From Sminthopsis crassicaudata (Eukaryota), in contig NC_133621.1 in NCBI RefSeq assembly GCF_048593235.1, forward strand, positions 299,097,146 through 299,161,145: DNA of 64,000 nt. Direction: 5' to 3'. A model generated the notes under the pieces. It saw only the letters and a program-made list of their open reading frames with translations. It searched no databases and was not told the DNA's origin. Position 1 is the first letter of the stretch. Each line of letters opens with the position of its first letter. This document shows positions 8,016 through 51,319 of the stretch, piece after piece. A program made the position numbers and the translations under genes.

Positions 8016-8541
8016 CAAGGGATTTCCTCCTTCAGATGGATTCTTTGGAAACCAAGCGGGTTGACTCTCAGTCCGAAGAGCATGGCCATCCATCTAGAGG
8101 GTGGTTCCCTACCCCTTCCTACTAGTTTAAGATTTTTTGTTCATTCTCAAAGTACTTTTCCACTGGCTTCTCCAATCCCGCTACCACCTCCTTCCCCAAA
8201 GGACAGTGTTGGAGTTTGGATGTGAGAGGAAAGGCTTGAAAAGACAGAGTGTGCTGTGGAGCGGCGCGACCCCCTTGATTGCCTCCCCTCCAAGAAAAAC
8301 TTCCCATTTTCCATCCGGCCCCTTCCTGAGATACACTCTCTCCCCTGAATTGGCAAAAAGGGCCAGAAGGGAGGGCTGGAATATAGGTGGGGGTGAGGAT
8401 TTAGCAGAAGCCCAGAGAGCAGCAGTCTATCTGAAGGTCCGACACCTCCCAGAGTTACACTCCTGAGGTTGGAGGTGAATGTTGAACTTGGGGGACCCAG
8501 CGCACCCTAGAGAATCACAGGAGCATTTCTCATCCTCTATC

Positions 8542-9620
8542 ATGGCTAGGGTCTAGGCTGAGGGCAATCGAGTCCGAGGTGTGAACTGAAGATCTAGAAG
8601 TGGGAATTCTCCCGGGCTGGGAAGCATCGGGGACCTTTGGGGAAGGGTGTATTCTAGGGGGGCATTGCCTCCCCCTCTAACTTGTCCCCCTGACCTCTCC
8701 AAGGGCTGCCCTTTCCATGCCCTCCCCCATGGAACTTGTCTTTGACAAGCTGGTAAGTCCAGGCAGATCCTGGGGGAGCAAGAGGAAAGGGAGAGTCGGC
8801 TTAAATTTAGGGTGTCCTCTGACTCTCCATTGGGGTTGGGGGCGGAAGAATGTGAGGGAATCCCTTTCCTTGAGTAGGGAAGAAAGATGAAGCGACAAGG
8901 AGGGATTGTGCGATGGGTGGAGATGAAACTTCTAGCAGGGGAACAAACTTTCTGGATTAAATGACTGTCTTACTAAATTAAGAATCTTCTGATTCTTCCT
9001 CGTTTTAGCCCTGACCCATTTAAAAATAAGACCGAATTAAGCTCACCAATACACATCTTGCATATTCTCTAGGAAACTAGCTCAGACTATTCCCTTCACC
9101 CTGTCCCCAATTATTTCTCCACTGATTTAGAACAAGACCGGACCACACATCTGTGCTGCCCTTCTCCCAAAGGGAGCAGAACAGGAGAAGCTAAGTTTCT
9201 TGGCCTTAGACTTTCCACAAGATCACCCTTGATTACCCATTCTTTCTGTACCTCCCTCTCTCTTGTCAACTCTCTTGCTCCTGGGAATGGCTGGATCTTA
9301 TTTAAGACCAAGACTTGAGGAAGCTCTTCCTGAAAACTTTCCTGGGGAGGATTTCCCTCCCTACTTAATGAAATAAGCAGAACTCTGGGAGAATGAGAAA
9401 GTGGGCAATGCTGGGTATATGGGGAAGGCAAGGTATGAGTGACCTAGCTACCAGAAGATTCCCCATTGAGGTATACTATATCTCCAATTCTTGGGATAGA
9501 ACTATCTTCACTTCCCCCTTCAATTTTGTGCAAGTGTCAAGATACATGCCATGCCAGCCTAAGATAGCCCTCGGACAGTGTGACTGAGATAGAAAATATA
9601 TGGGCCTGGCACCCAGAAAA
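8542..9620 (+). pseudogene. Galectin-1-like remnant B: promoter, exon 1 (ATG GCT AGG, 8542-8550) and part of intron 1; exons 2-4 absent
   Basis: 8040-9620 aligns by eye to the promoter, exon 1 and intron 1 of gene C. Homology stops at about 9620 where L1 3' fragments begin. No exon 2-4 motifs occur before the next unit starts at about 10710. Confidence 0.8.
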
Positions 9621-16500: not shown

Positions 16501-17134
16501 TGGAAAGGGCACTGGCCTTGGGGTCAAAGGACCTGGGGACCAAGCGTGGCTCAGCTCCTCGCTGCCCAGGTGACCCCAAGCTCTCTGTCTCCCCAGTGTT
16601 TAAGAAACCAATAGTTTCCACTTTGGGCCATGCCTGCTTAGGATTCCCCCCTTCGGATGGACTCTTTGGGGGCCAAGGGGCGACTCCCAGCCAGACCAGA
16701 GCCCGGCCATCCATCTAGAGGGCGGCCCCGGCCCCTCCCCGCCACCATCGGATTCTTGTTCATTCGCAAAGCGCTTTTCCACTGTCCCCCCAGTCTCTCC
16801 CACTCCCCACAAGCCCCTTTCCCAGAGGGCAGTATTCAGGGTTTGGATGGGGGAAGAAAAGCGGAGCGTGATGTGGAGGGGCGTGACCCCCTTGATTGCC
16901 TCCCCTCCGAGAAAGGCTTCACGTTTTCCATCCGTCCCCGCCCCCCGAGACACTCCCTCTCCCCTGGATTGGCGAAAAGGGCCAGAAGGGAGGGCCGGGG
17001 GAAGCCCAGACAGCAGCAGTCTATTAGAAGGTCCGACACCTCCCAGAGTTCCGCTCCCGAGGTCGGAGGTGCACGTCGAACTTGGGGGAGCAGCGATCCC
17101 TGGAGAATCGCAGGAGCATTTCTCATCCTCCGCC

Positions 17135-19867
17135 ATGGCTAGGGTATAGGCAGAGGGCAATCGAGTCCGGGGCGTGAGCTGAAGGCCTAGAAGGGGGGAT
17201 TCCCCGGGGCTGGGAAGGGTGTGTTGGAGGGGGGCTGGGAATGGCCGAAGCATCGCCTCCCCCGGGGGCCTGGGGCCCCCGGCTCTTCTTCCCCTCTGCC
17301 TTGTCCCCCTACTCCCCAATGACCTCCCCTTGGAACTTGTCTTTGACAAGCCGGTACGTCCAGGCAGATGCTGGGGAGACGTGAGCAAGCGGAAAGGAGC
17401 AATCGGCTGGATTAGGGGGGCAGCGAATCCTTTCCTTGAGGGAAGAAGAAAAGGCAAGGGGGGATTGTGGGATGGGAGGACGGGAGACTTGGAGCGGGGA
17501 TCGCACTGTCTGCAGTGAGTTAAGGGCAACCCAGCCGTGGCTGAAGTCTGGGAAGGAAGGATGCTAGAGAAGAGAGAAGGGGTGGGGCAGGGGACACGTG
17601 ATTCCTCAGAGTCTTCCGATTTCCAGCCCGGGTCCCTTTAAAAAACACGAACGAATGAATCTCACCAATAAACTTCTTACCTTTATTTCAGGAAACCAGC
17701 TCATAAGAGTCCCTTCATCCTGTCCCCAATTATTCTCCATTTAGAACATGGAGGGACCACACAGCGGGGCTGCCCTTCCCCCAAAGGGCGGGGGAGCAGG
17801 ACAAGCCAAGTTTCTTGACCTTAGTCTTTGTGCCAAGGTCACCTCTGATTCCCCATCCTTCCCTTGCCAACTCCCTTGCTCCTGGGAATGGCTGGATCTT
17901 GTTTGGGACCAAGGCTTAGCTCTAGAGAAAACTCCTGAAAACTTTCCTGGGGAGGATTTCCATCCCTACTTAATAACATGAGCAGAATCCTGGGAGAATG
18001 AGGAAGCGGGCAGAGCAGTTGCTGGGGTATGTGGGGAAGACATGGGTGACCTAGCTACCATAGAGATTCCCCATTGAGAGAATCCCCAAGATTCTCCTTG
18101 ATTGGCTCCCCCTCCAAGATACTGTATTTCCAAACCTGAGGGTAGAACCACTCTCCTCCCTTCCCTCTCCACTTTGTCCAACTGCCAAGATACATGCCAT
18201 GCCAACCGAAGATGGCACTGGGGCAGCCAGTGGAACCCAGAGAGCGTGGGCACCTGGCACCCAGGAAAAACTTTCATTTCAGTTCAGATTCTGTTGCTCA
18301 CGTGTATCACCTGGCACAGGTTACTTCTTGATTCTCAGTTTCCTGAGGTGTAAAATGTGTAAAAAACCAATCATCTAGGCTACTTCTTCACTGACCAGAT
18401 AAAGAAACTGGGGCCCAGAGACAGGAAGGGGCTTCTCCAAGGCCACAGAGCTGGGAATCACTAACTAGCCTGCAGACAATCTGATTTCCCAGAACGTCCA
18501 TGGAGGGTGGAACTTCCCCAACTTAAACCTCTGGGTCCCCTCAGGAACCAGCCAGCCCTAACCTTGCTGTGCTTGGTCTCTTCAGGAAATGGTTGCCTAT
18601 AAGATGTCCCTCCAATATGGAGCCTGCATAAAAGTAGTGGGAGATGTTCCATCTGATGCCAAGCAGTAAGTCACACTTGGGAAGCATGAGACAAAATTTA
18701 ACCCTGGGTGAGAGCTGAGTCCTTTATTCCCCTGCTTGCACTTGATCCTTGATTAGAAAGCACCAAGATGTTTTTGCTTCAGCCACAGAAGGCTGGGCTA
18801 GGATTCAGGATCAGGAAAAACTTCCCAACAAAAGCTTCTCCAATAGATGACATGGAAAGTTTGGGTAGGAAGTGAATTCCCTGTCTCTGGAAGGAGTACA
18901 GTATGTCCCATGGTTCCTTGTTAGACAGGAGGGGAGAGGAATGGGCTCAGGAATGGATGAGGTTCCCTTTGGACGTCTTCTAGCTCAGGGCTTCCTTTAA
19001 TGGGGAATTTCCAAGGCCCTGGGACCCATTCTAATGATAGAGGTATGTTCCCCATTCCCAGGTGTATGGTTAACCTGGGCAAAGATGAATTTAACATTGC
19101 CCTGCACTTCAACCCACGCTTCAACCATCAAAATATCATCAAGAAGATCATCTGCAACTCCAGGAGTGATGGCATATGGGGCAAAGAAATACAGGAACAC
19201 AACTTCCCTTTTGTACCAGGGACTTCGATGGAGGTAAGGCCCCAGAATCAGAGCATGGAATGTCAGAAGAACTCAAGAGATAATCTCATTCACACTTGCA
19301 TTTGACAGCAAAGTCGTGGAAGTGAACTCTGTCTGATAGGGGAAAAGATGAAAAGCTAAAGGGCAAAAGGGTCAATGGGTTCCCAAAGATTAATAGCCCA
19401 GAATCCCTTGAGCTGAAGAGAAGTTGGGGAAAATGGAAGGGAATTGTGAAGGGCTGTGGTGCCAATGGGATAAGAAGAGACTCTGGGGTATGTCAGGACA
19501 CATAACAGAACTATAGAATTAGATCTGAAAAAACCTCATGCACCATCTGGTGTTACTCCTTCATTTTACAGAGGAGGAAACAGGTTAGAAATGGAGAAAT
19601 GCCTTGCCCAAGATTTCACAGTGTCTTGTAGTGAGTGTCTTGAGCTGGAATTTGATCCAAGTCTTCCTGTCTCCAAGCCCAAGGTTCTCTGTTCACCTCC
19701 TTCTGCCTCTCCTCATTCAGATTTCCATAACCTTTGAAGCACATGGTTTTAAACTGAGGCTGCCCAATGGTTTTGAGTTCACTTTCCCTAATCGTCTTAA
19801 GTTACGCACCCTCAACTACTTGGAAATTGGTCATGATATCCTGATCAGATCAGTGACCTTCAAATGA
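17135..19867 (+). CDS. Galectin-1-like paralog C, 135 aa, intact. Exons 17135-17143, 18586-18665, 19062-19233, 19721-19867. MAREMVAYKMSLQYGACIKVVGDVPSDAKQCMVNLGKDEFNIALHFNPRFNHQNIIKKIICNSRSDGIWGKEIQEHNFPFVPGTSMEISITFEAHGFKLRLPNGFEFTFPNRLKLRTLNYLEIGHDILIRSVTFK
   Basis: GT-AG introns, 9/80/172/147 nt exons, and LHFNPRFN, CNS, WG.E, FPNRL galectin-1 motifs. AATAAA at 19922-19927; TATA-like TATTAGAA at 17022-17029. Confidence 0.93.
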
Positions 19868-21758
19868 GCCCTCCAATCAAGCGGACTTCAGACATTTTTG
19901 ACTCTTGGGACTCTCATGACTAATAAATATGCTGATGGAGATAACAGCTGACATTGTCTGTTTTTCTAATCTTGGAGAGAGAGGGCTGGGTTTGGCGTTT
20001 GGGAAGGATGGCTTTGTGATCCTGGACAAGTACCTTTACCTCAATGGTTCTTTGCTGGCTTTCTAGGACAATGGTTCTCTACTTGAGATAGATTTTGAAT
20101 GGGGAAAAAATTACATCGTCATTGTCAGTAACCTCTAGTCTTCTGAGTATTCCTCAACGTTTTTTAATATATACCTATATTTTTAAAATACATTTTTAAA
20201 ACATTATAATTGGGGAGAGGAGCGATGAAAGGGACGGCAGAATTTAATACTCAGAATTTTTTAATGAATATTAAGGACATTTAAAAACAAAGCATTCACA
20301 AAATGAATTAAGATTTTAGGATGATCCAGAAGGGGACCCTTCTAAATGTACCCAATTTCCCTATCCTTCACACTACTCCAGGAACTTGGAACTGATTAAA
20401 TTTAAATTTCTGTATATTTATCCATGGGCTGAATTATTCTTGGAGGCGAAAGCTTTCCTCAGGATTTTCCTGACCATATTCATCTGCCCAGTGTGTAACC
20501 TACAGCTTTCACTCCATTCATTCCAAATATTGGAAAATCCTGGAAAGGGAGAGATTTGAAAGAATCAGATGGGATTGATTAGAATCCTATGTGAAAGTGG
20601 AATAGTGGGCAAAGACACCAGATTTCAGGTCTGCAAAACATTCTGAAGGTTGATTCAGTCTTAGGGGGAATTCAAAGGGCCATCCTAAGGAGACTGGGCA
20701 GATCCCCAGACAGGTCATCCAATCCCTTTTTCAGAGAGAGCTTATGCCTTTGATTAGATAGAAGAGATGACTAGAACCAATCAGAGAGCCCAGACTGGGG
20801 AGGGACAAATCTACCATAGAAGAATGGGTATTGTCCCAGACTCACTGGGCTTGCTCTGTCTCATCCTTTGAGGAAGGACAAAGTAGGAGAGGCACATCTC
20901 CTCCAGCTGTGTGACCTAGGGATGTTACATCATTCCACAAATGCAAAATGGGGATCATGTCCCATTTCGGGGGGCAGGTTCCCAAAAGTGCCTCCTTCCC
21001 CAGTTAGTTGTGGTCCTTCTTTCTTGAAGAGGGCCCACTATGTTGAGGTCAAAGTACATTGTGTCCAGATGTGGCTGAATATATCCTAAGAAACTTGGAA
21101 GGCGCAAGTAATCTATATGACCAAGTCCTATTTCTAGAGAGAATTCTAGTCTACAGAATGTTTCCCTCTAAAACACTCTATTTTCCCATTTTGAAATCTC
21201 TTTGACCATTTTTAACGACTGAAGAGTTTGTTTTATAAGTCAGACCTTCATGATTTTATTTTAGATCTTTAAATATCAGGTGCATAATTTAGGTAAAGAA
21301 AGAAATAGCAAGTGAGATAAAAACTGAAATTCTCTGAAGTTTCAAAATTGGAGAAAAATTAAGACATTGTACTAAATTGTATGAAGTTTTGTTATTGGTA
21401 AATTTTAACAGCATTATTTAGGAGCCTTTAACAGGCGATTGGAATCAGAGAAACAGAGCCTCTTTCAGAACTGCACCCAGAATGAGACCTCTTCCAGAAT
21501 GTCCAAGAGAAGATAATTATACCTTTCAAGCCATCTACATATCTTTCCTGAAAATTAGCTATATACTGTTCAAATTTCACTCATTGTTTCCACCTTCCTT
21601 TTATTATATAAAGACACTTGTGGGGAGAAAAACAACTCTTATTTTAAATTCAGGAATTTTTGGGGAGAAAAACAACTCTTATTTTAAATTCAGGAATTTT
21701 GATTGTCCCCCTTCCTAGTTGGAAAGTTCCTAATTTTTCTTCCAATTAAAAATCAGAT

Positions 21759-21888
21759 GGGGGCAGCTAGGTGGCGCAGTGGATGGAGCACCAGCCCTGA
21801 ATTCAGGAGGACCCGAGTTCAAATTTGGTCTCAGACACTTAACACTTCCTAGCTCTGTGACCCTGGGGAAGTCACTTAACCCCAGCCT

Positions 21889-21924
<36 letters not shown>
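21759..21924 (+). mobile_element. Young marsupial CORE-SINE (WSINE1-like)
   Basis: tRNA-like head ggggcagctaggtggcgcagtgg with A/B boxes, long poly(A), TSD AAAAATCAGAT. Confidence 0.9.
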
Positions 21925-21927
<3 letters not shown>

Positions 21928-23006
21928 GATCACCTAACTTTGAATTATTTTCATGTATAAAAATCTCTCTGCCCCTATATTTGAGATTCAGCCCTAAGAT
22001 GAGGAAGGGGTCTGGTCCTGGTTTGTTGGGCAATAGTCAGATGCTACTTGATATATAAATAAGCTTGACAGACCAAGCCTTTGTCTCTTTAATCATTTAA
22101 TCTTTTACCCATAATAACCAGGAAGGAGTTGGTATAAAGACTGTTATCTCTTTTTAATAAAGAAGGAAACTGAGATTCAGACTGGAGATAAGACTTTGCC
22201 ATAGTCCCACAGCTGGCAGTGCAGAGCGTAGAAGGGTAAGTGCTGGGATTGAAGGGACTAGAGTCAGGCTCAGGATATGAGGCACCCGAGGTTGGTGAGG
22301 GGCTTGGGAAGAGAGGAGCAATGTCTGTTGTGCCCCACTCACTCCTGTGAGCTCCCTCTGCCTAGTGATCATGGCTTTTGTTTTTCCAACCTCTCCAAGA
22401 TTTCATGAGTCATTCATTCCCTTGCCTTTGAGATAGATGGTAGGAGAAGGAATAGTCAGGTGTGTTGGACTTGAGTACTTGAGCCTTGTCTGACAATACA
22501 GAGGGACTGCCCTACAGGAGAAGATTTAGCCTTGTCCCAGAGAATCAGGAGGGAGTTAAGAAAGGCACAGAAGGAACTGTCCATTCAGTTCATTAATGGA
22601 AGCTGAACAGAAGTGGAAACCATTGATAGAATGAAAGGAATAAGTTTCTCATTGTTAGAGATTCTCTAAGGGCCCTTAGTGACCATGCTGGGAGGATATT
22701 TCAGAGGAAGATTTTATTTAAATAGATGCATGAGATGCCTTCCAAATGGTGATTTGATGACCAAATCTGTGATGACATTTTGCATATAGGGAACTTCAGA
22801 CAAGCAAACTTCCTCCCCCTCAAAAACAAGTCAATATTGTCTCTGAAACATAGAGTATCAGAGCAGTTCTTTGACTGATTTGTGTCATTGACACCACTCC
22901 GGCATTCTGGCGAAGGCTTTCTGAGAAAAATGTAGTGTTTGATGTTTTAGAGCAGGAAAAGGAGATTTCTATTAGAGTTCAGTGAAAATAAAGATGTAAT
23001 TTCTTA

Positions 23007-23153
23007 GGGGCAGCTAGGTGGCGCAATGGATAGAGCACCAGCCTTGAATTCATTGAGTTCAAATTTGATCTCAGACACTTAACACTTCCTAGCTGTGTGA
23101 CCCTGGGCAAGTCACTTAACCCCAGCCTCAAAAAATAAAAAATAAAAAATAAA
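23007..23153 (+). mobile_element. WSINE1-like SINE, 7-nt internal deletion variant
   Basis: gaattcattgagttc in place of gaattcaggaggacccgagttc; TSD-like TAATTTCTT. Confidence 0.88.
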
Positions 23154-23417
23154 GGTAATTTCTTTTTTTCCTCTCCAAGTTCAAAATCCCTTAGAATCTA
23201 TCCATGGAAACTGAGCAGATCCATAAATTCCAGATTAAGAATCTCTATTTAGAGGGTTACCTCAAGAACTGAGAAGTTAAGGGACTTGGGAGGTGGGATT
23301 TGCCAGCACTTCTTGACTTTGAGGGAGTGGACTCTGTCCACTAAGATGCTTTACTTTTCTTTCCATCAGGATCCCAATTTACAGATGAAGAAACAGAGCA
23401 TCTGAGAAGACAAGTGA

Positions 23418-23548
23418 GGGGGCAGCTAGGTGGCGCAGTGGATAGAGCACCAGCCCTGAATTCAGAAGGACCAGAGTTCAAAGCTGGTCTCAGACACTTA
23501 ACACTTCCTAGCTGTGTGACAGTGGGCAAGTCACTTAACCCCAGCCTC

Positions 23549-23576
<28 letters not shown>
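23418..23576 (+). mobile_element. Young WSINE1-like SINE
   Basis: Full head, poly(A), 13-bp TSD AGAAGACAAGTGA. Confidence 0.9.
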
Positions 23577-23586
<10 letters not shown>

Positions 23587-24736
23587 TGACTTGTAGCTGT
23601 AGGTCCTCACCTTCAGGTAAGCTCGGAGGTTTCTAACCTCTGACCTCACATCTCTGTGTCACTGGAGTTCAAGGTCAGGAGAAATGTCTGTGGGAGGCTG
23701 TATCACAGGCCACGTAGAACCTCTATCTTGGGTCTCATTGTCTGGCAGCACCCAGGAGTATCTGCCCCTCTCTTCCTTGGGCTGGCAGGAAGGGCTTTCT
23801 GAAGAAACCTCCGCCTCCCTCCCTTCAGTCTCATCCTGCAGGCAGAGCAAGAAGAGCTTTCTGACAGCAGGATCAGCATTGGGCCCCTTGCTAGACTTCC
23901 TCTCCTTACAACTAAAGATACCGGGATCTCCACAGAGCTTAGTAAGGCTGGGGACACTTACAGGCCCCTGGGGAGCTGTCCAAACCAGTAGTCACTGACC
24001 CTCATACAGACGGAGAGCAAGCTGACTCCATGGCCTCCTCCCACCCACATTCGTTTTCAAGGAACCACCACATACTCAGGAGGCCACAATCTTAGGTAAG
24101 TTACTCTCTACACTGTGCCTCAGTTTCCCTATTTGTAAAACATGTCAATTTAACCGTGTGATATGGTGAAAAGAGCACTGGCCTTGGGGTCAGAGGAGCT
24201 GGGTACAAGTTCTGGCTCAGCTCAAGCGACCCAAAAGTTCCCACGTTATGTCGTCTGTGATTAGAGTTCCCCCCTGGACTCTTTGCAGGTCGGGGGGCCC
24301 ACTCTCAGCCAGACCAGAGCCCGGCCCCCGGCCCCTCCCCGCCACCATCGGATTCTTGTTCATTCGCAAAGCGCTTTTCCACTGTCCCCCCAGTCTCTCC
24401 TACTCCCCACAAGCCCCTTTCCCAGAGGGCAGTATTCAGGGTTTGGATGGGGGAAGAAAAGCGGAGCGTGATGTGGGGGGGGCGTGACCCCCTTGATTGC
24501 CTCCCCTCCGAGAAAGACGTCCAAATTTCCATCCGTCCCCGCCCCCCGAGACACTCCCTCTCCCCTGGATTGGCGAAAAGGGCCAGAAGGGAGGGCCGGG
24601 GGAAGCCCAGAGAGCAGCAGTCTATTAGAAGGTCCGACACCTCCCAGAGTTCCGCTCCCGAGGTCGGAGGTGCACGTCGAACTTGGGGGACGCAGCGATC
24701 CCTGGAGAATCGCAGGAGCATTTCTCATCCTCCGCC

Positions 24737-26859
24737 ATGGCTAGGGTATAGGCAGAGGGCAATCGAGTCCGGGGCGTGAGCTGAAGGCCTAGAAGGGGGG
24801 ATTCCCCGGGGCTGGGAAGGGTGTGTTGGAAGGGGGCTGGGAATGGCCGAAGCATCGCCTCCCCCGGGGGCCTGGGGCCCCCGGCTCTTCTTCCTCTCTG
24901 CCTTGTCCCCCTACTCCCCAATGGCCTCCCCTTAGAACTTGTCTTTGACAAGCCGGTACGTCCAGGCAGATGCTGGGGAGACGTGAGCAAGAGGAAAGGG
25001 GCAATCGGCTGGATTAGGGGGGCAGGGAATCCTTTCCTTGAGGGAAGAAGAAAAGGCAAGGGGGGGATTGTGGGATGGGAGGACGGGAGACTTGGAGCGG
25101 GGATCGCACTGTCTGCAGTGAGTTCAGTGCAACCCAGCCGTGGCTGAAGCCTGGGAAGGAAGGATGCTAGAGAAGAGAGAAGGAGTGGGGCAGGGGACGC
25201 GTGATTCCTCAGATTTCTCAGTAAAATGTGTAAAAAACCAATCTAGGCTACTTCTTCACTGACCAGATAAAGAAACTGGGGCCCAGAGACAGGAAGGGGC
25301 TTCTCCAAGGCCACAGAGCTGGGAATCACTAACGAGCCTGCAGACAATCTGATTTCCCAGAACGTCCATGGAGGGTGCAACTTCCCCCTGGAAGCTCTGG
25401 GTCCCCTCAGGTCCCAGCCAGCCCTAACCTTGCTGTGCTTGGTCTCTTCAGGAAATGGTTGCCTATAAGATATCCCTCCAACGTGGAACCTGCATAAAAA
25501 TAGAGGGAGATATTCCAATTGATGCCAAGCAGTAAGTCACACATGGGACGGATGAGACAAAATTTAACCCTGGGTGAGAGCTGAGTCCTTTATTCCCCTG
25601 CTTGCACTTGACCCTTGATTAGAAAGCACCAAGCTGTTTTTGCTTCAGCCACAGAAGGCTGGGCTAGGATTCAGGATCAGGAAAAACTTCCCAACAGAGG
25701 CTTCTCCAATAGATGACATGGAAAGTTTGGGTAGGAAGTGAATTCCCTGTCTCTGGAAGGAGTACAGTATGTCCCATGGTTCCTTGTTAGACAGGAGGGG
25801 AGAGGAATGGGCTCAGGAATGGATGAGGTTCCCTTTGGACGTCTTCTAGCTCAGGGATTCCTTTAATGGGGAATTTCCAAGGCCCTGGGACCCATTCTAA
25901 TGATAGAGATATGTTCCCCATTCCCAGTTGTATGGTTAACCTGGGAGAAGATGAATTTAACATTGCCCTGCACTTCAACCCACGCTTCAACTATCAAAAT
26001 AATATCAAGAAGATCATCTGCAACTCCAGGAGTGATGGCATATGGGGCAAAGAAATACAGGAACACAACTTCCCTTTTGCACCAGGGACTTCGATGAAGG
26101 TAAGGCCCCAGAGCATGGAATGTCAGAAGAACTCAAAAAATAATCTCAATCACACTTGCATTTGAAGGCAAAGTCGTGGAAGTGAATGCTGATGGGGGGA
26201 AAGATGAAAAGCTAAAGGGCAAAAGGGTCAATGGGTTCCCAAAGGCCAATAGCAAGAAGCTCAGCATCCCTTAAGCTGAAGAGAAGTTGGGGAGAATGGA
26301 AGGGAATTGTGAAGGGCTATGGTGCAATGGGATAAGAAGAGACTCTGGGCAGGACACATAACAGAACTATAGAACTGTCATGCAGCATGTGGTGTTGCTC
26401 CCTTATTTTACAGAGGAGGAAACTGAGGTTAGGAATGGAGAAATGCCTTGCCCAAGGTTTCACAGTGTCTTGTAGTGAGTCTTTTTTTTTCCCTGAGGCT
26501 AGGGTTAAGTGACTTGCCCAGGGTCACACAGCTAGGAAGTGTTAAGTGTCTGAGACCAGATTTGAACTCAATGAATTCAAGGCTGGTGCTCTATCCACTG
26601 CACCACCTAGCTGCCCCTGTAGTGAATGTCTTGAGCTGGAATTTGATCCAAGTCTTCCTGTCTCCAAGCCCAAGGTTCTCTATTCACCTCCTTCTGCCCT
26701 TTCCTCATTCAGATTTCCATAACCTTTGAAGCACATGGTTTTAAACTGAGGCTGCCCAATGGTTTTGAGTTCACTTTCCCTAATCGTCTTAAGTTACACA
26801 CCCTCAACTACTTGGAAATCGGTCATGATATCCTGATCAGATCACTGTCCTTCAAATGA
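24737..26859 (+). CDS. Galectin-1-like paralog D, 135 aa, intact, recent sister of C. Exons 24737-24745, 25452-25531, 25928-26099, 26713-26859. MAREMVAYKISLQRGTCIKIEGDIPIDAKHCMVNLGEDEFNIALHFNPRFNYQNNIKKIICNSRSDGIWGKEIQEHNFPFAPGTSMKISITFEAHGFKLRLPNGFEFTFPNRLKLHTLNYLEIGHDILIRSLSFK
   Basis: Same exon layout and splice sites as C. 21 nt differences in 408 coding nt versus C (hand count). AATAAA at 26917-26922; SINE in intron 3. Confidence 0.93.
26482..26617 (-). mobile_element. WSINE1-like SINE (deletion variant) in intron 3 of gene D, absent from gene C
   Basis: Reverse-complement SINE with TSD tgtagtga; the empty site is seen in gene C at about 19628-19640. Confidence 0.9.
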
Positions 26860-27645
26860 GCCCTCCAATCAAGCGGACTTCAGACCATTCTTGACTCTTG
26901 GGACTCTTTTATGACTAATAAACATGCTGATGAAGATAACAGCTGACATTGTCTGTTTTTCTAATCTTGGAGATAGAGGCTGTACCACAGGATACATAGA
27001 ACCTCTATTCTGGGTCTCATTCTCTGGCAGCACCCAGGAGTGCCTGCCCCTCCCTTCCTTGGGCCGGCATGGAAGGGCTTTCTGAAAAACCTCAGCCTTC
27101 CTCCTTTCAGTCTCATCATCCAGGCAGAGCATAAAGGGCTTTCTGACAGCAGGATCAACATTGGGGCCAGACTCCCTCTCCTTATGACTAAAAGGCAGCT
27201 AGTGGGGTAGCTAGGTGGCGTACTGGATAGAACACCTGCCCTGAGGTCAGGAGGACCTAAATTCAAATCTGAAAATTCCTGGATTACCTGGAAATACAGA
27301 GAGGCTCTCTTACAGGAGGATTTAGGCTGGTTCCTCTCAGCCTCAGCAGAACCAAAAGGAAATTAGGAAAAGTGCAGAGGTATCTGTCTATTCAGTCCAA
27401 CAATGGTAGCTGAACAGAAGCGGAACCTGTTGTTGGAGGTCTTCAAAGAAAGCCTAGTGACCATTTGGGGGGGAATTTTTAGGACTATTTTTTTATTAAA
27501 GCTCTTTAATCTTCAAAACATATACACGGATAATTTTTCACATTGACCCTTGCAAAACCTTTTCCAATTTTCCCTTCTTATCCCCACCTCCTCCCCTAGA
27601 TGGCAAGTAATCCAATATATGTTAAACATGGTAAAAAAAAATTAT

Positions 27646-45805: not shown

Positions 45806-46256
45806 NNNNNNNNNNNNNNNNNNNNNNNNNNNNNNNNNNNNNNNNNNNNNNNNNNNNNNNNNNNNNNNNNNNNNNNNNNNNNNNNNNNNNNNNNNNNNNN
45901 NNNNNNNNNNNNNNNNNNNNNNNNNNNNNNNNNNNNNNNNNNNNNNNNNNNNNNNNNNNNNNNNNNNNNNNNNNNNNNNNNNNNNNNNNNNNNNNNNNNN
46001 NNNNNNNNNNNNNNNNNNNNNNNNNNNNNNNNNNNNNNNNNNNNNNNNNNNNNNNNNNNNNNNNNNNNNNNNNNNNNNNNNNNNNNNNNNNNNNNNNNNN
46101 NNNNNNNNNNNNNNNNNNNNNNNNNNNNNNNNNNNNNNNNNNNNNNNNNNNNNNNNNNNNNNNNNNNNNNNNNNNNNNNNNNNNNNNNNNNNNNNNNNNN
46201 NNNNNNNNNNNNNNNNNNNNNNNNNNNNNNNNNNNNNNNNNNNNNNNNNNNNNNNN
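45806..46256. other. Assembly gap (451 N), upstream of the gene F promoter
   Basis: Run of N. Confidence 1.
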
Positions 46257-46801: not shown

Positions 46802-49703
46802 ATGATGTTGGGAGTGAGTGCACCAGAGTATAAACTGCGGATGTCCCTGTCCTGGGTATAGGTTAAGGGTTCGATGGTGGGGAATCCTCTGGGGTTGGGG
46901 AGACTTGCGAAGAGCGTGCTCCTAGCTCCTGGCGGGGGGGGTGGGAGGGGTGGAGAGGATGCTCTATCCTCGCTCTCTGAAGGAGCTGGAGTACCTTGAA
47001 CTTCTTCTCTAACCCCCCAATTCTAACCTCTCCAGCCCTTCAAGGGCTGCTCGCCCCCTTGAGACTTGTTTTTGGCAAGCTGCTAAATCCACAGAGCTCC
47101 CAGGAGAGGGGAGCTAGGGAGAATGGGAATCAACATGGACTATGGATTATGGATTAATGAATTATGGACTATGGATTAATAGACTCTGAGGGCTCCGCGG
47201 GGCTGATGAGGGGCGGGGCGAGGGGGGAGATGTGTTAGGATGTCGGGGAATTTCCTTCCTTGAATGAAGAGGCAAGGTGGGATTTGATGGGAATGGAAAT
47301 AGCAAGGGCTCAGACGTTCTGAAATGAATGACTGCCTTAGAGGTAACTCCAACCCAGCCACAGATAGAGAGAGAATCCAGGCTGAAAAAGCTCCGTTGGA
47401 ACGAGAGAAGGTTGAAGGTGGGAGAGAAGAAATAGGGCAAAGGGTCCCAGGAGGATTTTTTAGGTTCCCTCTACTTCTAGTCCCCGCCCCTTTAAATAGA
47501 AGACTGAATTTACCTCATAAATACACTTCTTGCCTCTTTTCTAGGAAACCAGTTTACAAGATTCACCCTTTCCCTTGAGTACTTCTCCATTGTAAGGGAC
47601 CACACATCTGTGCTGTCCTAGTTCCAATATACTTCTCCAAAAAGGGCTGAGGGGTCAAGAGAAGCTAAGTTCCTTGACTTTAAGGGTTCTGCCAAGGTCA
47701 CTCTTGATTCCCCCTTCTTTCTGAGTCTCCCCCTCCCTTGCCAATTCCTGTTTTCCTGGATATCCTGGATGGATCTTGTGTGGGACCAAGACTTGGCTGG
47801 AGAGAATGGGAGAATCTCTTCCTGAAAACTTTCCCCGGGAGGAATTACTTTTTGCTTAGTGAAATGAAGATAGTTTTGGGAAAAATGAAGAAAAGGGTAA
47901 GGCAGCAGGTGGGGAGCGTGGCAAAAGCAAGGGCAGATTGAACTAGCACAGAGGTTCTCCACTGAGGTACAATGTTCTCCAAACTTTTGGATAAAAACCC
48001 TTTGTCCAAATGCTAGGATTCGTGTGATAGCAATCTAAGATGGCATTGGCTTAGCCAGTGAGACAGACAGATCATGGGCCTGGATCCCCAGGAAAAACTT
48101 GGCTTCCAGTTGTGATTCTGTTGCTCACTTGTGTCATTTGGGACAGGTTGGCTTCTTTGAGCCTCAGTTTCCTGATGTAGAAAATGAGAAGTGGACGGGA
48201 TCAATCATCTTAGCTAGTTCCTCATTTAACAGATGAGGAAACTGAGATCCAGAAAGAGGAAGAGGTTCCCCCAAAGTCACCGAGTTGGGATTGACTCCCA
48301 CTTCAGCCCTAACTAGCCTGGAGGAGAGTCTGCTTTCCTAGAATATTTGTAAAATATGTGTAAAGGGTGGAACTTCCCCAACTGGAAGTTCTGGGTCTCT
48401 TCAGTTCCCGGACAGACCTGAACTTTCTGTGCTTGGTCTCTTCAGGGCATGGTTTTCCATGATTTAGACCTCTCACCTGGAAGCTGCATAAAAATAGGAG
48501 GAGATATCCCATCTGATGCCAAGCAGTAAGTGGGAGATGGGGAGGAGAGATGCAATTTAGCCCTGGGTGAGAGCCCAGTCCTTTGACTTACTTGCTTGCC
48601 CTTGACCCTTGCGGAGAAGCACCAAGCTGATACTTCATCAGCCGCAGAGGCAGGATTCAGCATCAGGAAAAACTTCCCAACCCAAGCTGCCCATTTACTG
48701 AAAGGAACAGTCCCTGCAGGTAGTAAGCTCCCTTTCCTCAGAGGTAGTAAAATATGGACCACTGTCGATCATTGAACAGGGTGGGGTAGGGATGTTCCTG
48801 AAGAAGAGAAGCCAGGATTGGGTGAGAGTGCCTTTGAGGGTCTTCTAATTCGGGAATTCCTTGAGTGGGAGGGTTGGGGGTGTTAAAGTTCTGAACTCCA
48901 TGCTAACGACCGAGACATGTTCTCAATTCCCAGCTTTAGCATAAACCTGGGAAAGGATGATCTTAACCTTGCCTTGCACTTAAACCCACGCTTCAATGCC
49001 TTCAAGGATAAGAATTTGTTAGTCTGCAACTGTCGCAATGATGGTGTTTGGAACCCTGAACAAAGGGAAAGTCACTTCCCTTTAGTTCCAGCGAGCAGGA
49101 CAGAGGTAAGGATCCAGAATCGGAGCATGGAATGGTCCACTTGGACTGGACCCAAGAGATGATTTCATCCACCCCTTGTATTTGACAGAAGAATTCTGGA
49201 AATAAACTCTGATGGGGAAAAGATGAAAGGCCAGAGGAAAAAGGGGTCAGTGGGTTTCCAAAGATCAGCAACAAGAAGGGCAACATCCCTTGAGCTGGGG
49301 AGAAGTTGGGAAGAAAGGAAGGGAATTGTGAAAAGCAGTGGTCCCAATATGGCTAGAAAAGACTCTGGGGTCTGCCAGGATAATATAACAGGATGCTAGA
49401 ATTAGAGCTGGAAAGAACCTCAGCTGTCTGACCTCCTCATTTTACAGAGGAGGAAACTGAGGCCCAAAATAGAGAAATCATTTTTTCCAAGGTCATCTTG
49501 TAGTGGAATCTGAATCCAGGACTTTCCACCTTCTCCCCATTCAGATTACCATAATCTTTGAGAAGACTTACTTTGTTGTGAAGTTGGATGATGGATATCA
49601 ATTCAATTACAACAATTACTTAAACTTCAAAACGATCAACTTCTTATCAGTTTCTGGTGACTTCAAGGTGAAAGCTGTGACCTTTGACTGCCCCTCCCAC
49701 TGA
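46802..49703 (+). CDS. Galectin-1-like paralog F, 139-140 aa, intact. Exons 46802 (or 46805)-46813, 48446-48525, 48934-49105, 49545-49703. (M)MLGGMVFHDLDLSPGSCIKIGGDIPSDAKHFSINLGKDDLNLALHLNPRFNAFKDKNLLVCNCRNDGVWNPEQRESHFPLVPASRTEITIIFEKTYFVVKLDDGYQFNYNNYLNFKTINFLSVSGDFKVKAVTFDCPSH
   Basis: GT-AG introns with 80 and 172 nt internal exons. Complete H-N-R/N/W-E-R signature. 4-residue C-terminal extension. AATAAA at 49743-49748. Confidence 0.92.
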
Positions 49704-51319
49704 AGCCAGACCAAAAATAGAGCTTGAGATGCTCTTATTTCTAATAAAAGTGATGATGATGATGATGATGAGATGATAACAGTTGACATTATCTGTGTTA
49801 TTCTGGTGTGGGGAAGAGAGGGCTGGGTTTGGAGTTGGGAAGGATGGCCAGGTGAGCCGGAACAAATCCCTTCACCTCAGGGGGCCTATGGTGACCTTCT
49901 GGGACAGGAGTTCTTCACCTGGGATAGATTTCAAATGGGAAAAAAAATGACATCTTTCTTGTCAGTAACTTCTGGTTTTCCAAGCATTCTTTCATATTTT
50001 TATTCATTATAATCCATTCTGGTTGCTTTTCCAGTGGGGAAGGGAGTGGTGGGAGGGAGAAAGAGTATTTGGGACTCAGAATATTATTATAATTCATATT
50101 GCTTGCCTTCCCAGTGGGGAAGGGAATGGTGAGAGGGAAGAAGAGTATTTGGGACTCAGAATTTTTTAAAGTGAATGTTAAAAACACATTTTTTAAAAGC
50201 TTTCACAAAATGACAATGACAAAAACATTACATTATTGTGAGAAGGGGGTCCGTGGGCTTGGCCAGACTGTCAAGAGCCCAGGTTATAATACAAACAGAA
50301 GTGACATTTCATGATTAGCAGTGGGGAAGGGATTTCTCAGAGTAGTAACTGCAGGGGAACCTCTATGTATTAGGGTGCTCAGACCCTGGGCAAAACCACC
50401 TGCTAGGAAGCTGCTGAATCCAAACCAGGAAAGCTCTGCGTCCCTTTTAGGACCAGCCAAGAAAACTCAGAGAGACCTGCTGGCAAGATCGGAGCAGAAG
50501 GGGAAGACATTCCCTGGCTATGAAATAAGAAGTTTCAGGTTTGAATTTGGCCTTTGACACTCACTGCCTAGAGGACCTTGGAGAAGTTCCTAGACTTCAG
50601 TTACCTCAGGGGTAAAATGAAGAGCTTGGTCTCCCATGTCCTTCCAGCTTTCTACATCTATGCTCCTATGGGCCCACATCATTCTCCAGCTTCAGTTTCC
50701 TCCTCTGTCACATGAAGAAGTTGGACTCGATGGCCTCTGAGGTCCCTTTTCTGGCCCTGTGATGTCTCCTCTCCTCTTCCAAAGTCAAATACATTGATGT
50801 GTCACTACCCTAAACTCTCAGCCTTTACCCACTTTCACTTTTAAAAGCACCAGACCCTAGATTTAGAACTGGAAGGGAACTTATAAGGCCCCACCTAAAT
50901 CCCTCCCTTGATCACTAAGGAAACTACACTTCCAGGAGGGAAGTGATTGATCCACCTAGTAAGCATCTGAAATGGAATTTGAATCTTGACTTCCAGATTC
51001 CGAGCTCCGCAGCCTGTCCACTATGAATCAGAAAACCTGGTTTTGAATCCCACCTCCCAAACACTGTAGTTGGGTGGCCACAGTCCATTTAATATCCTCA
51101 TCCGTACAAAGGGGGAAGTCGTATTTCCTAGCCACCTACCAAATTAAAGATGTTATGAGGAAAGTGATATAGAAACACTAGAGCAAGGGGAGCTCTTATG
51201 ATTGAGAGTCAGGAGAGCTAGATTCAAATCCTGGTTCTGACCTTTATTGCCTGCAGAGATCCATTCCCAGGGCAGCAAAAGTCTCTATAATACCTCTGAC
51301 AAAATATTCTTCGAACATC

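What the first reader, a model, noticed from the sequence alone, without database searches (positions are those of the whole stretch)
18586..26859. Strong excess of amino-acid-changing substitutions between sister genes C and D
Hand count: 21 coding differences give 16 amino-acid changes and only 2 purely synonymous codon changes (GGC/GGA, ATT/ATC). Exon 2 differs at 9 of 80 nt, all in amino-acid-changing codons (M10I, Y14R, A16T, V20I, V21E, V24I, S26I), while the adjacent 396-nt intron 2 differs at only about 9 positions (~2%). An exon diverging about five times faster than its neighbouring intron suggests diversifying selection. The changes sit away from the H-N-R-W-E core, which is unchanged. 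Counts are small, and patchy gene conversion could contribute.
Basis: partly seen in the sequence, partly recalled or inferred. Interest (0 to 1): 0.8.

Follow-up and report, generated by a model that had tools for sequence, protein, structure and literature searches.

The report
Old galectin gene pair, patchily homogenised
Two neighbouring galectin-1-like genes of a small marsupial differ mostly by amino-acid changes. They are an old pair kept alike by gene conversion, so the exon-versus-intron contrast alone does not prove selection, though two related marsupials point to fast, probably adaptive, protein change.

Summary
The counts are exact: C and D differ at 21 of 408 coding bases, giving 16 amino-acid changes and 2 purely synonymous codons. 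Exon 2 differs at 9/80 and intron 2 at 9/396.

The inference does not hold as stated. Antechinus and Sarcophilus carry the same two genes around the same spacer, so the duplication predates the dasyurid radiation. C and D differ by 4.2% in non-coding DNA, against about 11.5% from the copies in those species. That is concerted evolution by gene conversion.

Differences are patchy. Exon 2 sits in a 176-nt island (18510-18685) whose intronic part is as divergent as the exon (9/94 vs 9/80, p=0.80). Pairwise dN/dS is 1.6-2.5 and not significant (p=0.12-0.33).

Across all six genes the coding sequence changes as fast as introns, yet has no indels or stops and keeps most sugar-binding residues. Site models favour a class with dN/dS near 8 (p=2e-5; p=0.001 after removing suspect codons). 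These sites include positions next to the sugar groove. Positive selection on a subset of sites is probable, not proven.

The scan noted a similar pattern, unchecked, for pair G3/G4 just upstream in this genome. No RNA evidence was obtained.

The parts
16717..19988 (+). Duplicated unit holding gene C: promoter/CpG-rich 5' region, 4 exons and 3' UTR
   Evidence: Self-BLAST pairs 16717-17610 with 24316-25213 (97%), 18350-19636 with 25221-26480 (92%) and 19627-19988 with 26618-26982 (95%). A 135-aa gene is called here in the public assembly.
24316..26982 (+). Duplicated unit holding gene D
   Evidence: The product is identical to P0001, 'galectin-1-like [Sminthopsis crassicaudata]'.
17135..17143 (+). 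C exon 1, coding part (ATG + 2 codons)
   Evidence: Good start context and a GT donor. The 21-nt site is identical in D and occurs only twice in the window.
18586..18665 (+). C exon 2 (80 nt)
   Evidence: AG/GT borders and an open frame. It differs from D at 9 positions, all non-synonymous.
19062..19233 (+). C exon 3 (172 nt), sugar-binding core
   Evidence: tblastn and splice sites. It differs from D at 8 positions.
19721..19867 (+). C exon 4 with stop codon
   Evidence: It differs from D at 4 positions.
24737..24745 (+). D exon 1, coding part
25452..25531 (+). D exon 2
25928..26099 (+). D exon 3
26713..26859 (+). D exon 4 with stop codon
18510..18685 (+). Divergent island around exon 2 in C (its partner in D is 25378-25551)
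   Evidence: 18 mismatches in 174 aligned nt plus a 2-nt indel. The neighbouring 18350-18509 and 18686-19061 have 7 in 533 (p=5e-7). The intronic part of the island has 9/94. Changes are split between the C and D lineages.
19277..19613 (+). Second divergent island, entirely within intron 3
   Evidence: 26/312 mismatches (8.3%) plus several indels. It shows that islands of this divergence occur without any coding sequence.
17012..17228 (+). Longest stretch identical between C and D (covers exon 1), a likely recent conversion tract
   Evidence: A 217-nt mismatch-free run, permutation p=0.018.
17617..18348 (+). Intron-1 segment present in C and absent from D
   Evidence: It is present in all four Antechinus and Sarcophilus copies, so it is a deletion in D, not an insertion in C.
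26480..26626 (+). Repeat (SINE-like) insertion in intron 3 of D only
   Evidence: It is absent from C and from the four outgroup copies. Similar elements lie elsewhere in the window.
19989..24315 (.). Spacer between C and D, orthologous to the spacer between the two copies in Antechinus and Sarcophilus
   Evidence: Collinear BLAST matches at 87-91% to L004 13382-16339 and L006 12851-16351.

Best explanation
C and D are the two members of an old tandem pair of galectin-1-like genes in the marsupial expansion at the LGALS1 locus. The window is Sminthopsis crassicaudata, the fat-tailed dunnart.

Shown: the duplication predates the split of Sminthopsis, Antechinus and Sarcophilus. Since then the two copies have repeatedly been copied onto each other by interlocus gene conversion. 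This keeps most of the promoter, introns and exons at 96-100% identity. It leaves short unconverted islands at 8-10%, close to the 11.5% seen against the copies in the other two genera. Exon 2 lies inside one such island, which explains why it looks five times more divergent than the average of intron 2.

Inferred: on top of this mosaic, the protein evolves unusually fast in all six genes. Non-synonymous sites change about as fast as introns, while reading frame, splice sites and most sugar-contact residues are kept. The mechanism I think most likely is diversifying selection on about 10 surface positions, with purifying selection on the fold. These positions lie in the N-terminal S1-F2 segment (14, 16, 26) and along or beside the sugar groove (30, 37, 55, 74, 76). 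I infer this tunes glycan or partner specificity of two secreted lectins.

Four of the C/D differences (Q30H, K37E, H52Y, I55N) recur between the upstream and downstream copy of Sarcophilus. They are therefore either old paralog-specific states that survived homogenisation or parallel changes.
For: Identity and family:
- The D protein equals P0001, galectin-1-like of S. crassicaudata, and carries PF00337.
- C aligns without gaps to human and bovine galectin-1 structures, E=2.5e-39.
- The D model has pLDDT 94.5 and is a beta-sandwich.

Old duplication:
- Antechinus L004 and Sarcophilus L006 each hold two intact copies about 7 kb apart.
- The spacer and outer flanks are collinear with the window at 87-91% identity.

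Concerted evolution:
- Non-coding divergence is 4.2% for C-D, 5.7% for Af1-Af2 and 6.1% for Sh1-Sh2, against 11.1-11.9% between Sminthopsis and the others.
- 99 sites are shared by C+D only, 32 by Af1+Af2 and 24 by Sh1+Sh2.
- On the coding sequence the species tree beats the orthology tree by 50 lnL units.

Mosaic:
- The index of dispersion of mismatches is 2.17 (p=0.0002), and the longest clean run is 217 nt (p=0.018).
- Island against neighbours gives p=5e-7, and exon 2 against its own flanks gives p=0.80.

Fast protein evolution under constraint:
- The CDS has 0.223 changes per site against 0.246 in non-coding DNA.
- There are no gap intervals in the CDS against 90 in 3251 non-coding columns (11.3 expected, P=1e-5).
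- M0 dN/dS is 1.85 (p=0.02), or 1.64 (p=0.06) with kappa fixed to the intron value.
- M1a against M2a gives 2dl=21.4 (p=2e-5). It gives 13.5 (p=0.001) without codons 14, 30, 37, 52 and 55.
- Exon 2 has 20 non-synonymous changes to 1 synonymous, dN/dS 7 (p=0.012).
- Null simulations never reached the observed M0 value (maximum 1.23 of 36) or the observed LRT (maximum 13.9 of 20 with mosaic, 4.6 of 16 without).
Against: - The pairwise C-D test is not significant (p=0.12-0.33).
- By simple counting, six-gene dN/dS is only about 1.1, and the non-synonymous rate equals the intron rate.
- The ML excess depends on the transition bias: kappa is 5.3 in the CDS against 3.3 in introns.
- Exon 2's non-synonymous rate is not clearly above the intron rate. 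My arithmetic on the counts gives 20 changes on about 61 sites against about 15 expected. Part of its high dN/dS comes from a single synonymous change.
- Gene conversion violates the single-tree assumption. In my simulations it inflated the site-test null (6 of 20 above the 5% cut-off).
- The codon-model code is my own, not PAML.
- Only three species and six genes were available, and Sminthopsis has no closer outgroup.
- No expression or binding data were obtained.
Confidence: 0.65

Rival explanations
1. There is relaxed constraint only. The two redundant lectin genes drift nearly neutrally (dN/dS about 1) while gene conversion shuffles patches. The apparent positively selected class is an artefact of conversion, multi-nucleotide mutations and small numbers.
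For: Counting gives dN/dS 0.75-2.5 for all 15 pairs, none significant. The non-synonymous rate is about equal to the intron rate. The M0 test weakens to p=0.06 with the intron kappa. A mosaic null inflates the site test. Clustered multi-base changes also occur in introns, at 18524-18528, 18546-18547 and 19327-19334.
Against: There are no indels or stops in six genes despite roughly neutral substitution rates (P about 1e-5 for indels). The sugar-contact core and all splice sites are invariant. M2a stays better after the conversion-like codons are removed (p=0.001). The observed M0 value and LRT exceed all null simulations. Several codons changed three or more times, to different residues.
Confidence: 0.28
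2. C and D are young sister genes from a recent duplication, and exon 2 has been driven apart by selection while the introns show the true, small age.
For: Intron 2 averages 2.3% against 11.3% in exon 2. The C-specific and D-specific exon-2 residues are not seen in other species.
Against: The same two-gene arrangement, with an orthologous spacer and flanks, is present in Antechinus and Sarcophilus. Intronic flanks of exon 2 and the intron-3 core are as divergent as exon 2. Paralogs in all three species are more alike than orthologs.
Confidence: 0.04
3. The exon-2 island was pasted into C or D from a third, more distant galectin paralog by a short conversion event. The cluster of differences is then imported rather than evolved in place.
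For: Differences are tightly clustered. Codon 26 of C (TCT) matches paralog F, and E21 of D matches paralog A. Many other paralogs lie nearby.
Against: Paralogs A, E and F are only about 70-79% identical over this stretch and would have imported many more changes. No other dunnart protein closer than 45% to C was found. Polarised with four outgroup copies, the island's changes fall on both genes and are interleaved: 10 C-derived, 5 D-derived plus a D-derived 2-nt indel, 2 ambiguous and 1 shared with a Sarcophilus copy.
Confidence: 0.03

Closest known systems
Canonical galectin-1 (LGALS1), prototype dimeric beta-galactoside lectin
   Same: It has 135 aa and aligns without gaps. It has the same four-exon layout; the LGALS1 exon sizes are from my own knowledge. 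It carries PF00337. His45, Asn47, Arg49, Asn62, Trp69 and Glu72 are kept. It lies on the same chromosome as the true galectin-1 gene, which sits next to a PDXP-like gene in Antechinus.
   Different: It is only 41-46% identical to eutherian galectin-1. Three further contact or network residues are replaced in both C and D: conventional His52 becomes Gln, Asp54 becomes Ile/Asn and Arg73 becomes Gln. It is a member of a marsupial-only expansion. Its dN/dS is about 1 or above, whereas LGALS1 is reported under purifying selection (PMC6751361).
Congerin I and II, conger eel skin-mucus galectins
   Same: They are prototype galectin-1-like duplicates described as products of accelerated, adaptive evolution after duplication, with changed sugar specificity (PMC2843614). 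They appear among the structure matches to C.
   Different: They are fish genes with no reported concerted evolution between the copies. Their function and structures are known; here nothing is measured.
Primate placental galectin cluster (LGALS13/14/16) and the artiodactyl LGALS15 cluster
   Same: They are lineage-specific tandem galectin clusters. Rate variation and positive selection are debated for them. [quoted passage not shown]
   Different: They sit at a different locus (chromosome 19 in human) and belong to a different galectin subfamily. Here shared synteny in three genera separates conversion from independent duplication.
Primate red/green opsin genes, where introns are more alike than exons (from my own knowledge; not checked in the library)
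   Same: A tandem pair is homogenised by gene conversion while a few functionally important amino-acid differences persist, so exons look more divergent than introns.
   Different: In opsins the retained sites have a measured function (spectral tuning). Here the function of the retained or fast sites is unknown, and most exon-2 differences are new rather than retained.

Membership tests
Galectin (Gal-bind_lectin, PF00337), galectin-1-like prototype | Gal-bind_lectin domain detected by profile | tested here: met
   PF00337 is precomputed for P0001 (identical to D) and for the called 135-aa products of both C and D.
Galectin (Gal-bind_lectin, PF00337), galectin-1-like prototype | Full-length similarity to solved galectin-1 structures and a beta-sandwich fold | tested here: met
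   C against bovine galectin-1 1sla gives E=2.5e-39, gapless. The AlphaFold2 model of D has pLDDT 94.5 and pTM 0.88, with 11 strands.
Galectin (Gal-bind_lectin, PF00337), galectin-1-like prototype | Core sugar-contact residues His, Asn, Arg (S4), Asn (S5), Trp and Glu (S6) | tested here: met
   H45, N47, R49, N62, W69 and E72 are present in C and D and in all four dasyurid relatives.
Galectin (Gal-bind_lectin, PF00337), galectin-1-like prototype | The remaining canonical galectin-1 contacts: conventional His52, Arg73 and its partner Asp54 | tested here: not met
   By the gapless alignment they are Q53, Q74 and I55 (C) or N55 (D). Position 74 is Q, K or R among the six genes.
Galectin (Gal-bind_lectin, PF00337), galectin-1-like prototype | Binding of beta-galactosides | not testable with these tools
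   This needs recombinant protein and a glycan array.
Concerted evolution of tandem duplicates by gene conversion | The duplication is older than the species split | tested here: met
   The two copies, the spacer and the flanks are collinear in Sminthopsis, Antechinus and Sarcophilus.
Concerted evolution of tandem duplicates by gene conversion | Paralogs within a species are more alike than orthologs between species | tested here: met
   Non-coding divergence is 4.2-6.1% within species and 7.4-11.9% between species. There are many species-specific sites shared by both copies.
Concerted evolution of tandem duplicates by gene conversion | Tract-like, mosaic distribution of differences | tested here: met
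   Dispersion is 2.17 (p=0.0002), the longest identical run is 217 nt (p=0.018), and islands of 8-10% lie between stretches of 0-2%.
Positive (diversifying) selection on the protein | Pairwise dN/dS of C against D significantly above 1 | tested here: not met
   dN/dS is 1.59 (Fisher p=0.33) or 2.5 by ML (LRT p=0.118).
Positive (diversifying) selection on the protein | The exon is more divergent than its immediately adjacent neutral DNA | tested here: not met
   Exon 2 has 9/80 against 9/94 in its flanks, p=0.80.
Positive (diversifying) selection on the protein | With more taxa, the site-class test favours dN/dS above 1 | tested here: met
   M1a against M2a gives 2dl=21.4, and 13.5 after dropping five codons. 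This exceeds the null simulations. The code is my own, there are six sequences, and the recombination caveat applies.
Positive (diversifying) selection on the protein | Gene-wide dN/dS above 1 with more taxa | tested here: inconclusive
   dN/dS is 1.85 (p=0.02) with free kappa, 1.64 (p=0.06) with the intron kappa and about 1.1 by counting.

The most novel reading that the evidence does not exclude
Selection actively resists homogenisation at groove-side residues. The upstream gene keeps Q30-K37-H52-I55 and the downstream gene keeps H30-E37-Y52-N55 in both Sminthopsis and Sarcophilus, although gene conversion has erased almost every other difference. On this reading, two distinct glycan specificities have been held apart for tens of millions of years inside a concertedly evolving pair. 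Meanwhile the exon-2-encoded face runs an arms-race-like turnover, for example against pathogens or in marsupial reproduction or lactation.
Probability: 0.25. Interest if true: 0.6.

Novelty: new member of a known kind. Interest (0 to 1): 0.4.

Why it matters
The case shows how an exon-faster-than-intron signal can arise from gene conversion in an old tandem pair, and how synteny in related species settles that question.

Biologically, it documents that a dasyurid-specific pair within the marsupial galectin-1 expansion evolves at or above the neutral rate at the protein level while staying intact. Variable positions include residues that contact sugar in canonical galectin-1.

I found no paper on this marsupial expansion in the searchable library. 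If the selected sites change glycan specificity, the pair would be a natural experiment in lectin retuning, comparable to the congerins. It would also be a candidate component of marsupial-specific immunity or reproduction.

Tried and rejected
I therefore have no transcript, splicing or polymorphism evidence. The run lists show only that some RNA-labelled runs hold words of both genes.
- The look-up of encoding contigs failed for Antechinus P0002 and P0004. Cluster members P0121 and P0122 gave the loci.
I modelled D (P0001) instead and did not send C elsewhere.
- The orthology tree, with upstream copies together, was rejected for the CDS by 50 lnL units.
- Paralogs A, E and F were rejected as donors of the exon-2 island because they are too divergent.
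- The branch model with C and D tips as foreground is no better than one ratio (p=0.58), so the fast evolution is not special to the dunnart pair.
- One long batch of site-model fits timed out and was rerun in parts.
- I did not run GENECONV, codeml or a dimer model, because they are not available here.


Full report
WHAT IS THERE

The window carries a tandem array of galectin-1-like genes. tblastn with the C product finds paralogs at about 1.8-3.1 kb (A), 17.1-19.9 kb (C), 24.7-26.9 kb (D), 33.0-33.8 kb (E) and 48.4-49.1 kb (F).

C and D have four exons of 9/80/172/147 coding nt with GT-AG introns, and each encodes 135 aa. The D product is identical to 'galectin-1-like [Sminthopsis crassicaudata]' (P0001). 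The locus is on CM109185.1 of assembly GCA_048593235.1, where both C and D are called as 135-aa Gal-bind_lectin genes.

C aligns without a gap to human and bovine galectin-1 structures (E=2.5e-39). An AlphaFold2 model of D is a confident beta-sandwich (pLDDT 94.5).

CHECK OF THE OBSERVATION

- 21 differences in 408 coding nt;
- 16 amino-acid changes;
- two purely synonymous codons;
- exon 2 at 9/80, with all changes in replacement codons;
- intron 2 at 9/396.

The exon 2 against intron 2 contrast is nominally strong (Fisher p=0.0009). The replacement excess itself is not significant in the pair:
- Nei-Gojobori gives Sd=3 (one step of the two-base I55N change is silent) and Nd=18. This gives dS=0.037, dN=0.060 and a ratio of 1.59, with one-sided p=0.33.
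- Maximum likelihood gives 2.5, with p=0.118 against 1.

THE PAIR IS OLD AND IS BEING HOMOGENISED

Protein searches found the nearest relatives only in dasyurids: Antechinus and Sarcophilus at 74-84%. The next relatives are at 55% or less.

Fetching the encoding loci showed two intact copies about 7 kb apart in Antechinus flavipes (Af1, Af2 in L004) and in Sarcophilus harrisii (Sh1, Sh2 in L006).

BLAST of window 14-31 kb against these loci is collinear:
- the flank upstream of C matches the flank upstream of Af1 and Sh1;
- the C-D spacer (19989-24315) matches the spacer between the copies at 87-91%;
- the flank downstream of D matches that of Af2 and Sh2.

One duplication therefore predates the split of the three genera. 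By my recollection of published timetrees, not tested here, that split is tens of millions of years old.

Yet in 1915 ungapped non-coding columns the paralogs are far more alike than the orthologs:
- C-D 4.2%, Af1-Af2 5.7%, Sh1-Sh2 6.1%;
- dunnart copies against the others 11.1-11.9%;
- 99 sites are private to C+D, 32 to Af1+Af2 and 24 to Sh1+Sh2.

The coding tree groups copies by species, 50 lnL units better than grouping by position. This is concerted evolution by interlocus gene conversion.

THE MOSAIC EXPLAINS THE EXON-INTRON CONTRAST

C-D mismatches are strongly clumped. The index of dispersion is 2.17 (p=0.0002), and the longest identical run is 217 nt around exon 1 (p=0.018).

Exon 2 lies in an island, 18510-18685, with 18 mismatches in 174 aligned nt plus a 2-nt indel. 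The adjoining 18350-18509 and 18686-19061 have 7 in 533 (p=5e-7).

The intronic part of the island has 9/94 against 9/80 for the exon (p=0.80). It is itself far more divergent than the rest of the neighbouring introns (p=0.0001).

A second island of 8.3% lies wholly inside intron 3 (19277-19613). Island divergence is close to the divergence from the other genera.

Polarising each difference with the four outgroup copies shows that the island's changes are interleaved on both lineages:
- 10 are C-derived;
- 5 are D-derived, plus a D-derived 2-nt indel;
- 2 are ambiguous, both in codon 26, where C and D each changed both bases;
- 1 (18616, Y14) is shared with Sh2.

Paralogs A, E and F are too distant to be donors. 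The island therefore diverged in place and was not imported.

IS THERE SELECTION?

With six genes the picture is richer.

By parsimony on the species tree, the coding sequence has 0.223 changes per site against 0.246 in non-coding DNA. Changes by exon, non-synonymous to synonymous, are 20:1 in exon 2, 34.5:9.5 in exon 3 and 17:5 in exon 4. The protein thus changes about as fast as neutral DNA.

These are not decaying genes:
- No indel touches the CDS, although 90 gap intervals occur in 3251 non-coding columns (11.3 expected in the CDS, P=1e-5).
- There are no stop codons.
- All splice sites and H45, N47, R49, N62, W69 and E72 are conserved in all six genes.

A rate near neutral together with such constraint implies a mix of conserved and very fast sites.

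My own implementation of Goldman-Yang codon models gives the following:
- M0 dN/dS is 1.85 (p=0.02 against 1). It is 1.64 (p=0.06) when kappa is fixed at the intron-derived 3.3 rather than the CDS estimate of 5.35.
- M1a against M2a gives 2dl=21.4 (p=2e-5), with about 19% of codons near dN/dS 8.
- The sites with posterior above 0.9 are 14, 16, 26, 30, 37, 55, 74 and 76.

Because conversion breaks the single-tree assumption, I made three further checks:
- I removed the five codons with cross-species patterns. The test still gave 2dl=13.5, p=0.001.
- I repeated the test on another topology, which gave a stronger result.
- I simulated the nearly neutral null. Without mosaic, the largest LRT in 16 runs was 4.6. 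With 15% of codons evolving on the orthology tree, 6 of 20 exceeded 5.99 but the largest was 13.9. M0 never exceeded 1.23 in 36 runs.

The C and D tips do not differ from the rest of the tree (p=0.58). I conclude that positive selection on a subset of sites is probable (about 0.6) but not proven. Relaxed constraint with conversion artefacts remains a live rival.

WHERE THE VARIABLE SITES LIE

Numbering is one higher than the conventional galectin-1 numbering, by the gapless alignment.

- Positions 14 and 16 are in the loop before strand F2.
- Positions 20 and 21 are in F2, and 24 and 26 are in the F2-S3 loop. This is the face opposite the sugar groove (strand limits).
- Position 30 starts strand S3.
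- Positions 52 and 55 flank the S4-S5 turn.
- Position 74 is on S6.

From established knowledge of galectin-1 structures, conventional Ser29, His52, Asp54 and Arg73 line or organise the binding groove. Here they are Q/H30, Q53, I/N55 and Q74. Position 74 is Q, K or R among the six genes.

So the invariant core is intact, but the differences are not all remote from it.

Positions 30, 37, 52 and 55 carry the same pair of states in dunnart and devil. The upstream copies have Q, K, H, I and the downstream copies have H, E, Y, N. Only 3 of about 80 non-coding C-D differences show such a pattern. This suggests retention of old paralog-specific residues against homogenisation, or parallel change. I could not separate the two.

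COMPARISON WITH WHAT IS KNOWN

Rapid, adaptive divergence of duplicated prototype galectins is known from the conger eel congerins (PMC2843614). Lineage-specific tandem galectin clusters are known from primates and artiodactyls, with debated selection and unresolved conversion against independent duplication (PMC6751361).

Introns more alike than exons in a converting tandem pair is the classic opsin pattern (from my own knowledge).

I found no paper on the marsupial galectin-1 expansion. Earlier notes of this scan describe the array and a similar exon-over-intron pattern for pair G3/G4 upstream. I did not test those.

VERDICT

- The specific argument is not valid, because the pattern reflects a conversion mosaic in an ancient pair.
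- The idea of diversifying selection is partly supported by six-gene analyses.
- This is a new member of a known kind, of moderate interest.
- Missing evidence: expression data (read laying was lost), more taxa, population data and binding assays.

Noticed in passing
window 8020-8624 and 9015-9470: This is a copy of the C/D promoter and exon-1 region (76-80% to 16641-17217 and 24456-24819) and of the intron-1 segment (77% to 17634-18078). tblastn finds no downstream galectin exons. It is possibly the relic of a further gene ('B'). The exact exon-1 site of C and D is not present there.
   Followed up: partly
window 48449-49114 (paralog F): F has His-Leu-Asn-Pro-Arg instead of His-Phe-Asn-Pro-Arg and Trp-Asn-Pro-Glu in the core. 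tblastn found no exon 4, although 3'-UTR-like similarity to C lies at 49762-49980. An N run (45806-46256) sits just upstream. It may be a degenerating or oddly built gene.
   Followed up: no
window 18524-18528, 18546-18547, 18652-18653, 19327-19334: Many C-D differences are clustered multi-base changes: three in 5 nt, two adjacent, and five in 8 nt. Codon 26 changed both CG bases independently in C (to TC) and in D (to AT). This suggests multi-nucleotide mutation or micro-conversion, which can inflate dN/dS tests.
   Followed up: partly
Sarcophilus proteins P0003 versus P0123/P0122 (Sh1, L006 10001-12405): Two database versions of the devil upstream gene differ at residues 43, 52, 53 and 60. 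In P0003 all four match the downstream copy Sh2. This is possibly a segregating gene-conversion tract or a difference between assemblies.
   Followed up: no
L004 (Antechinus) and L006 (Sarcophilus): Public annotation merges neighbours. The two Antechinus genes appear as isoforms X1-X6 of one gene (P0002 is Af1, P0121 is Af2). The devil 'galectin-4-like' P0124 (369 aa) joins Sh2 to the orthologue of paralog E.
   Followed up: partly
six-gene alignment, C coordinates 16798-16988 (5' flank of the unit): Here the Antechinus and Sarcophilus copies keep position-specific states: 13 sites are private to Af1+Sh1 and 13 to Af2+Sh2. C and D are nearly identical to each other in the same region. Conversion therefore reaches further upstream in the dunnart than in the other two genera.
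   Followed up: partly
L002 and L003 (Antechinus CM028221.1, 285.77-285.82 Mb): The true galectin-1 gene (P0017) lies next to a PDXP-like HAD hydrolase, about 130 kb before the Af1/Af2 pair, with further galectin-1-like genes between them (P0010, 241 aa, two domains). The expansion therefore spans well over 100 kb.
   Followed up: no
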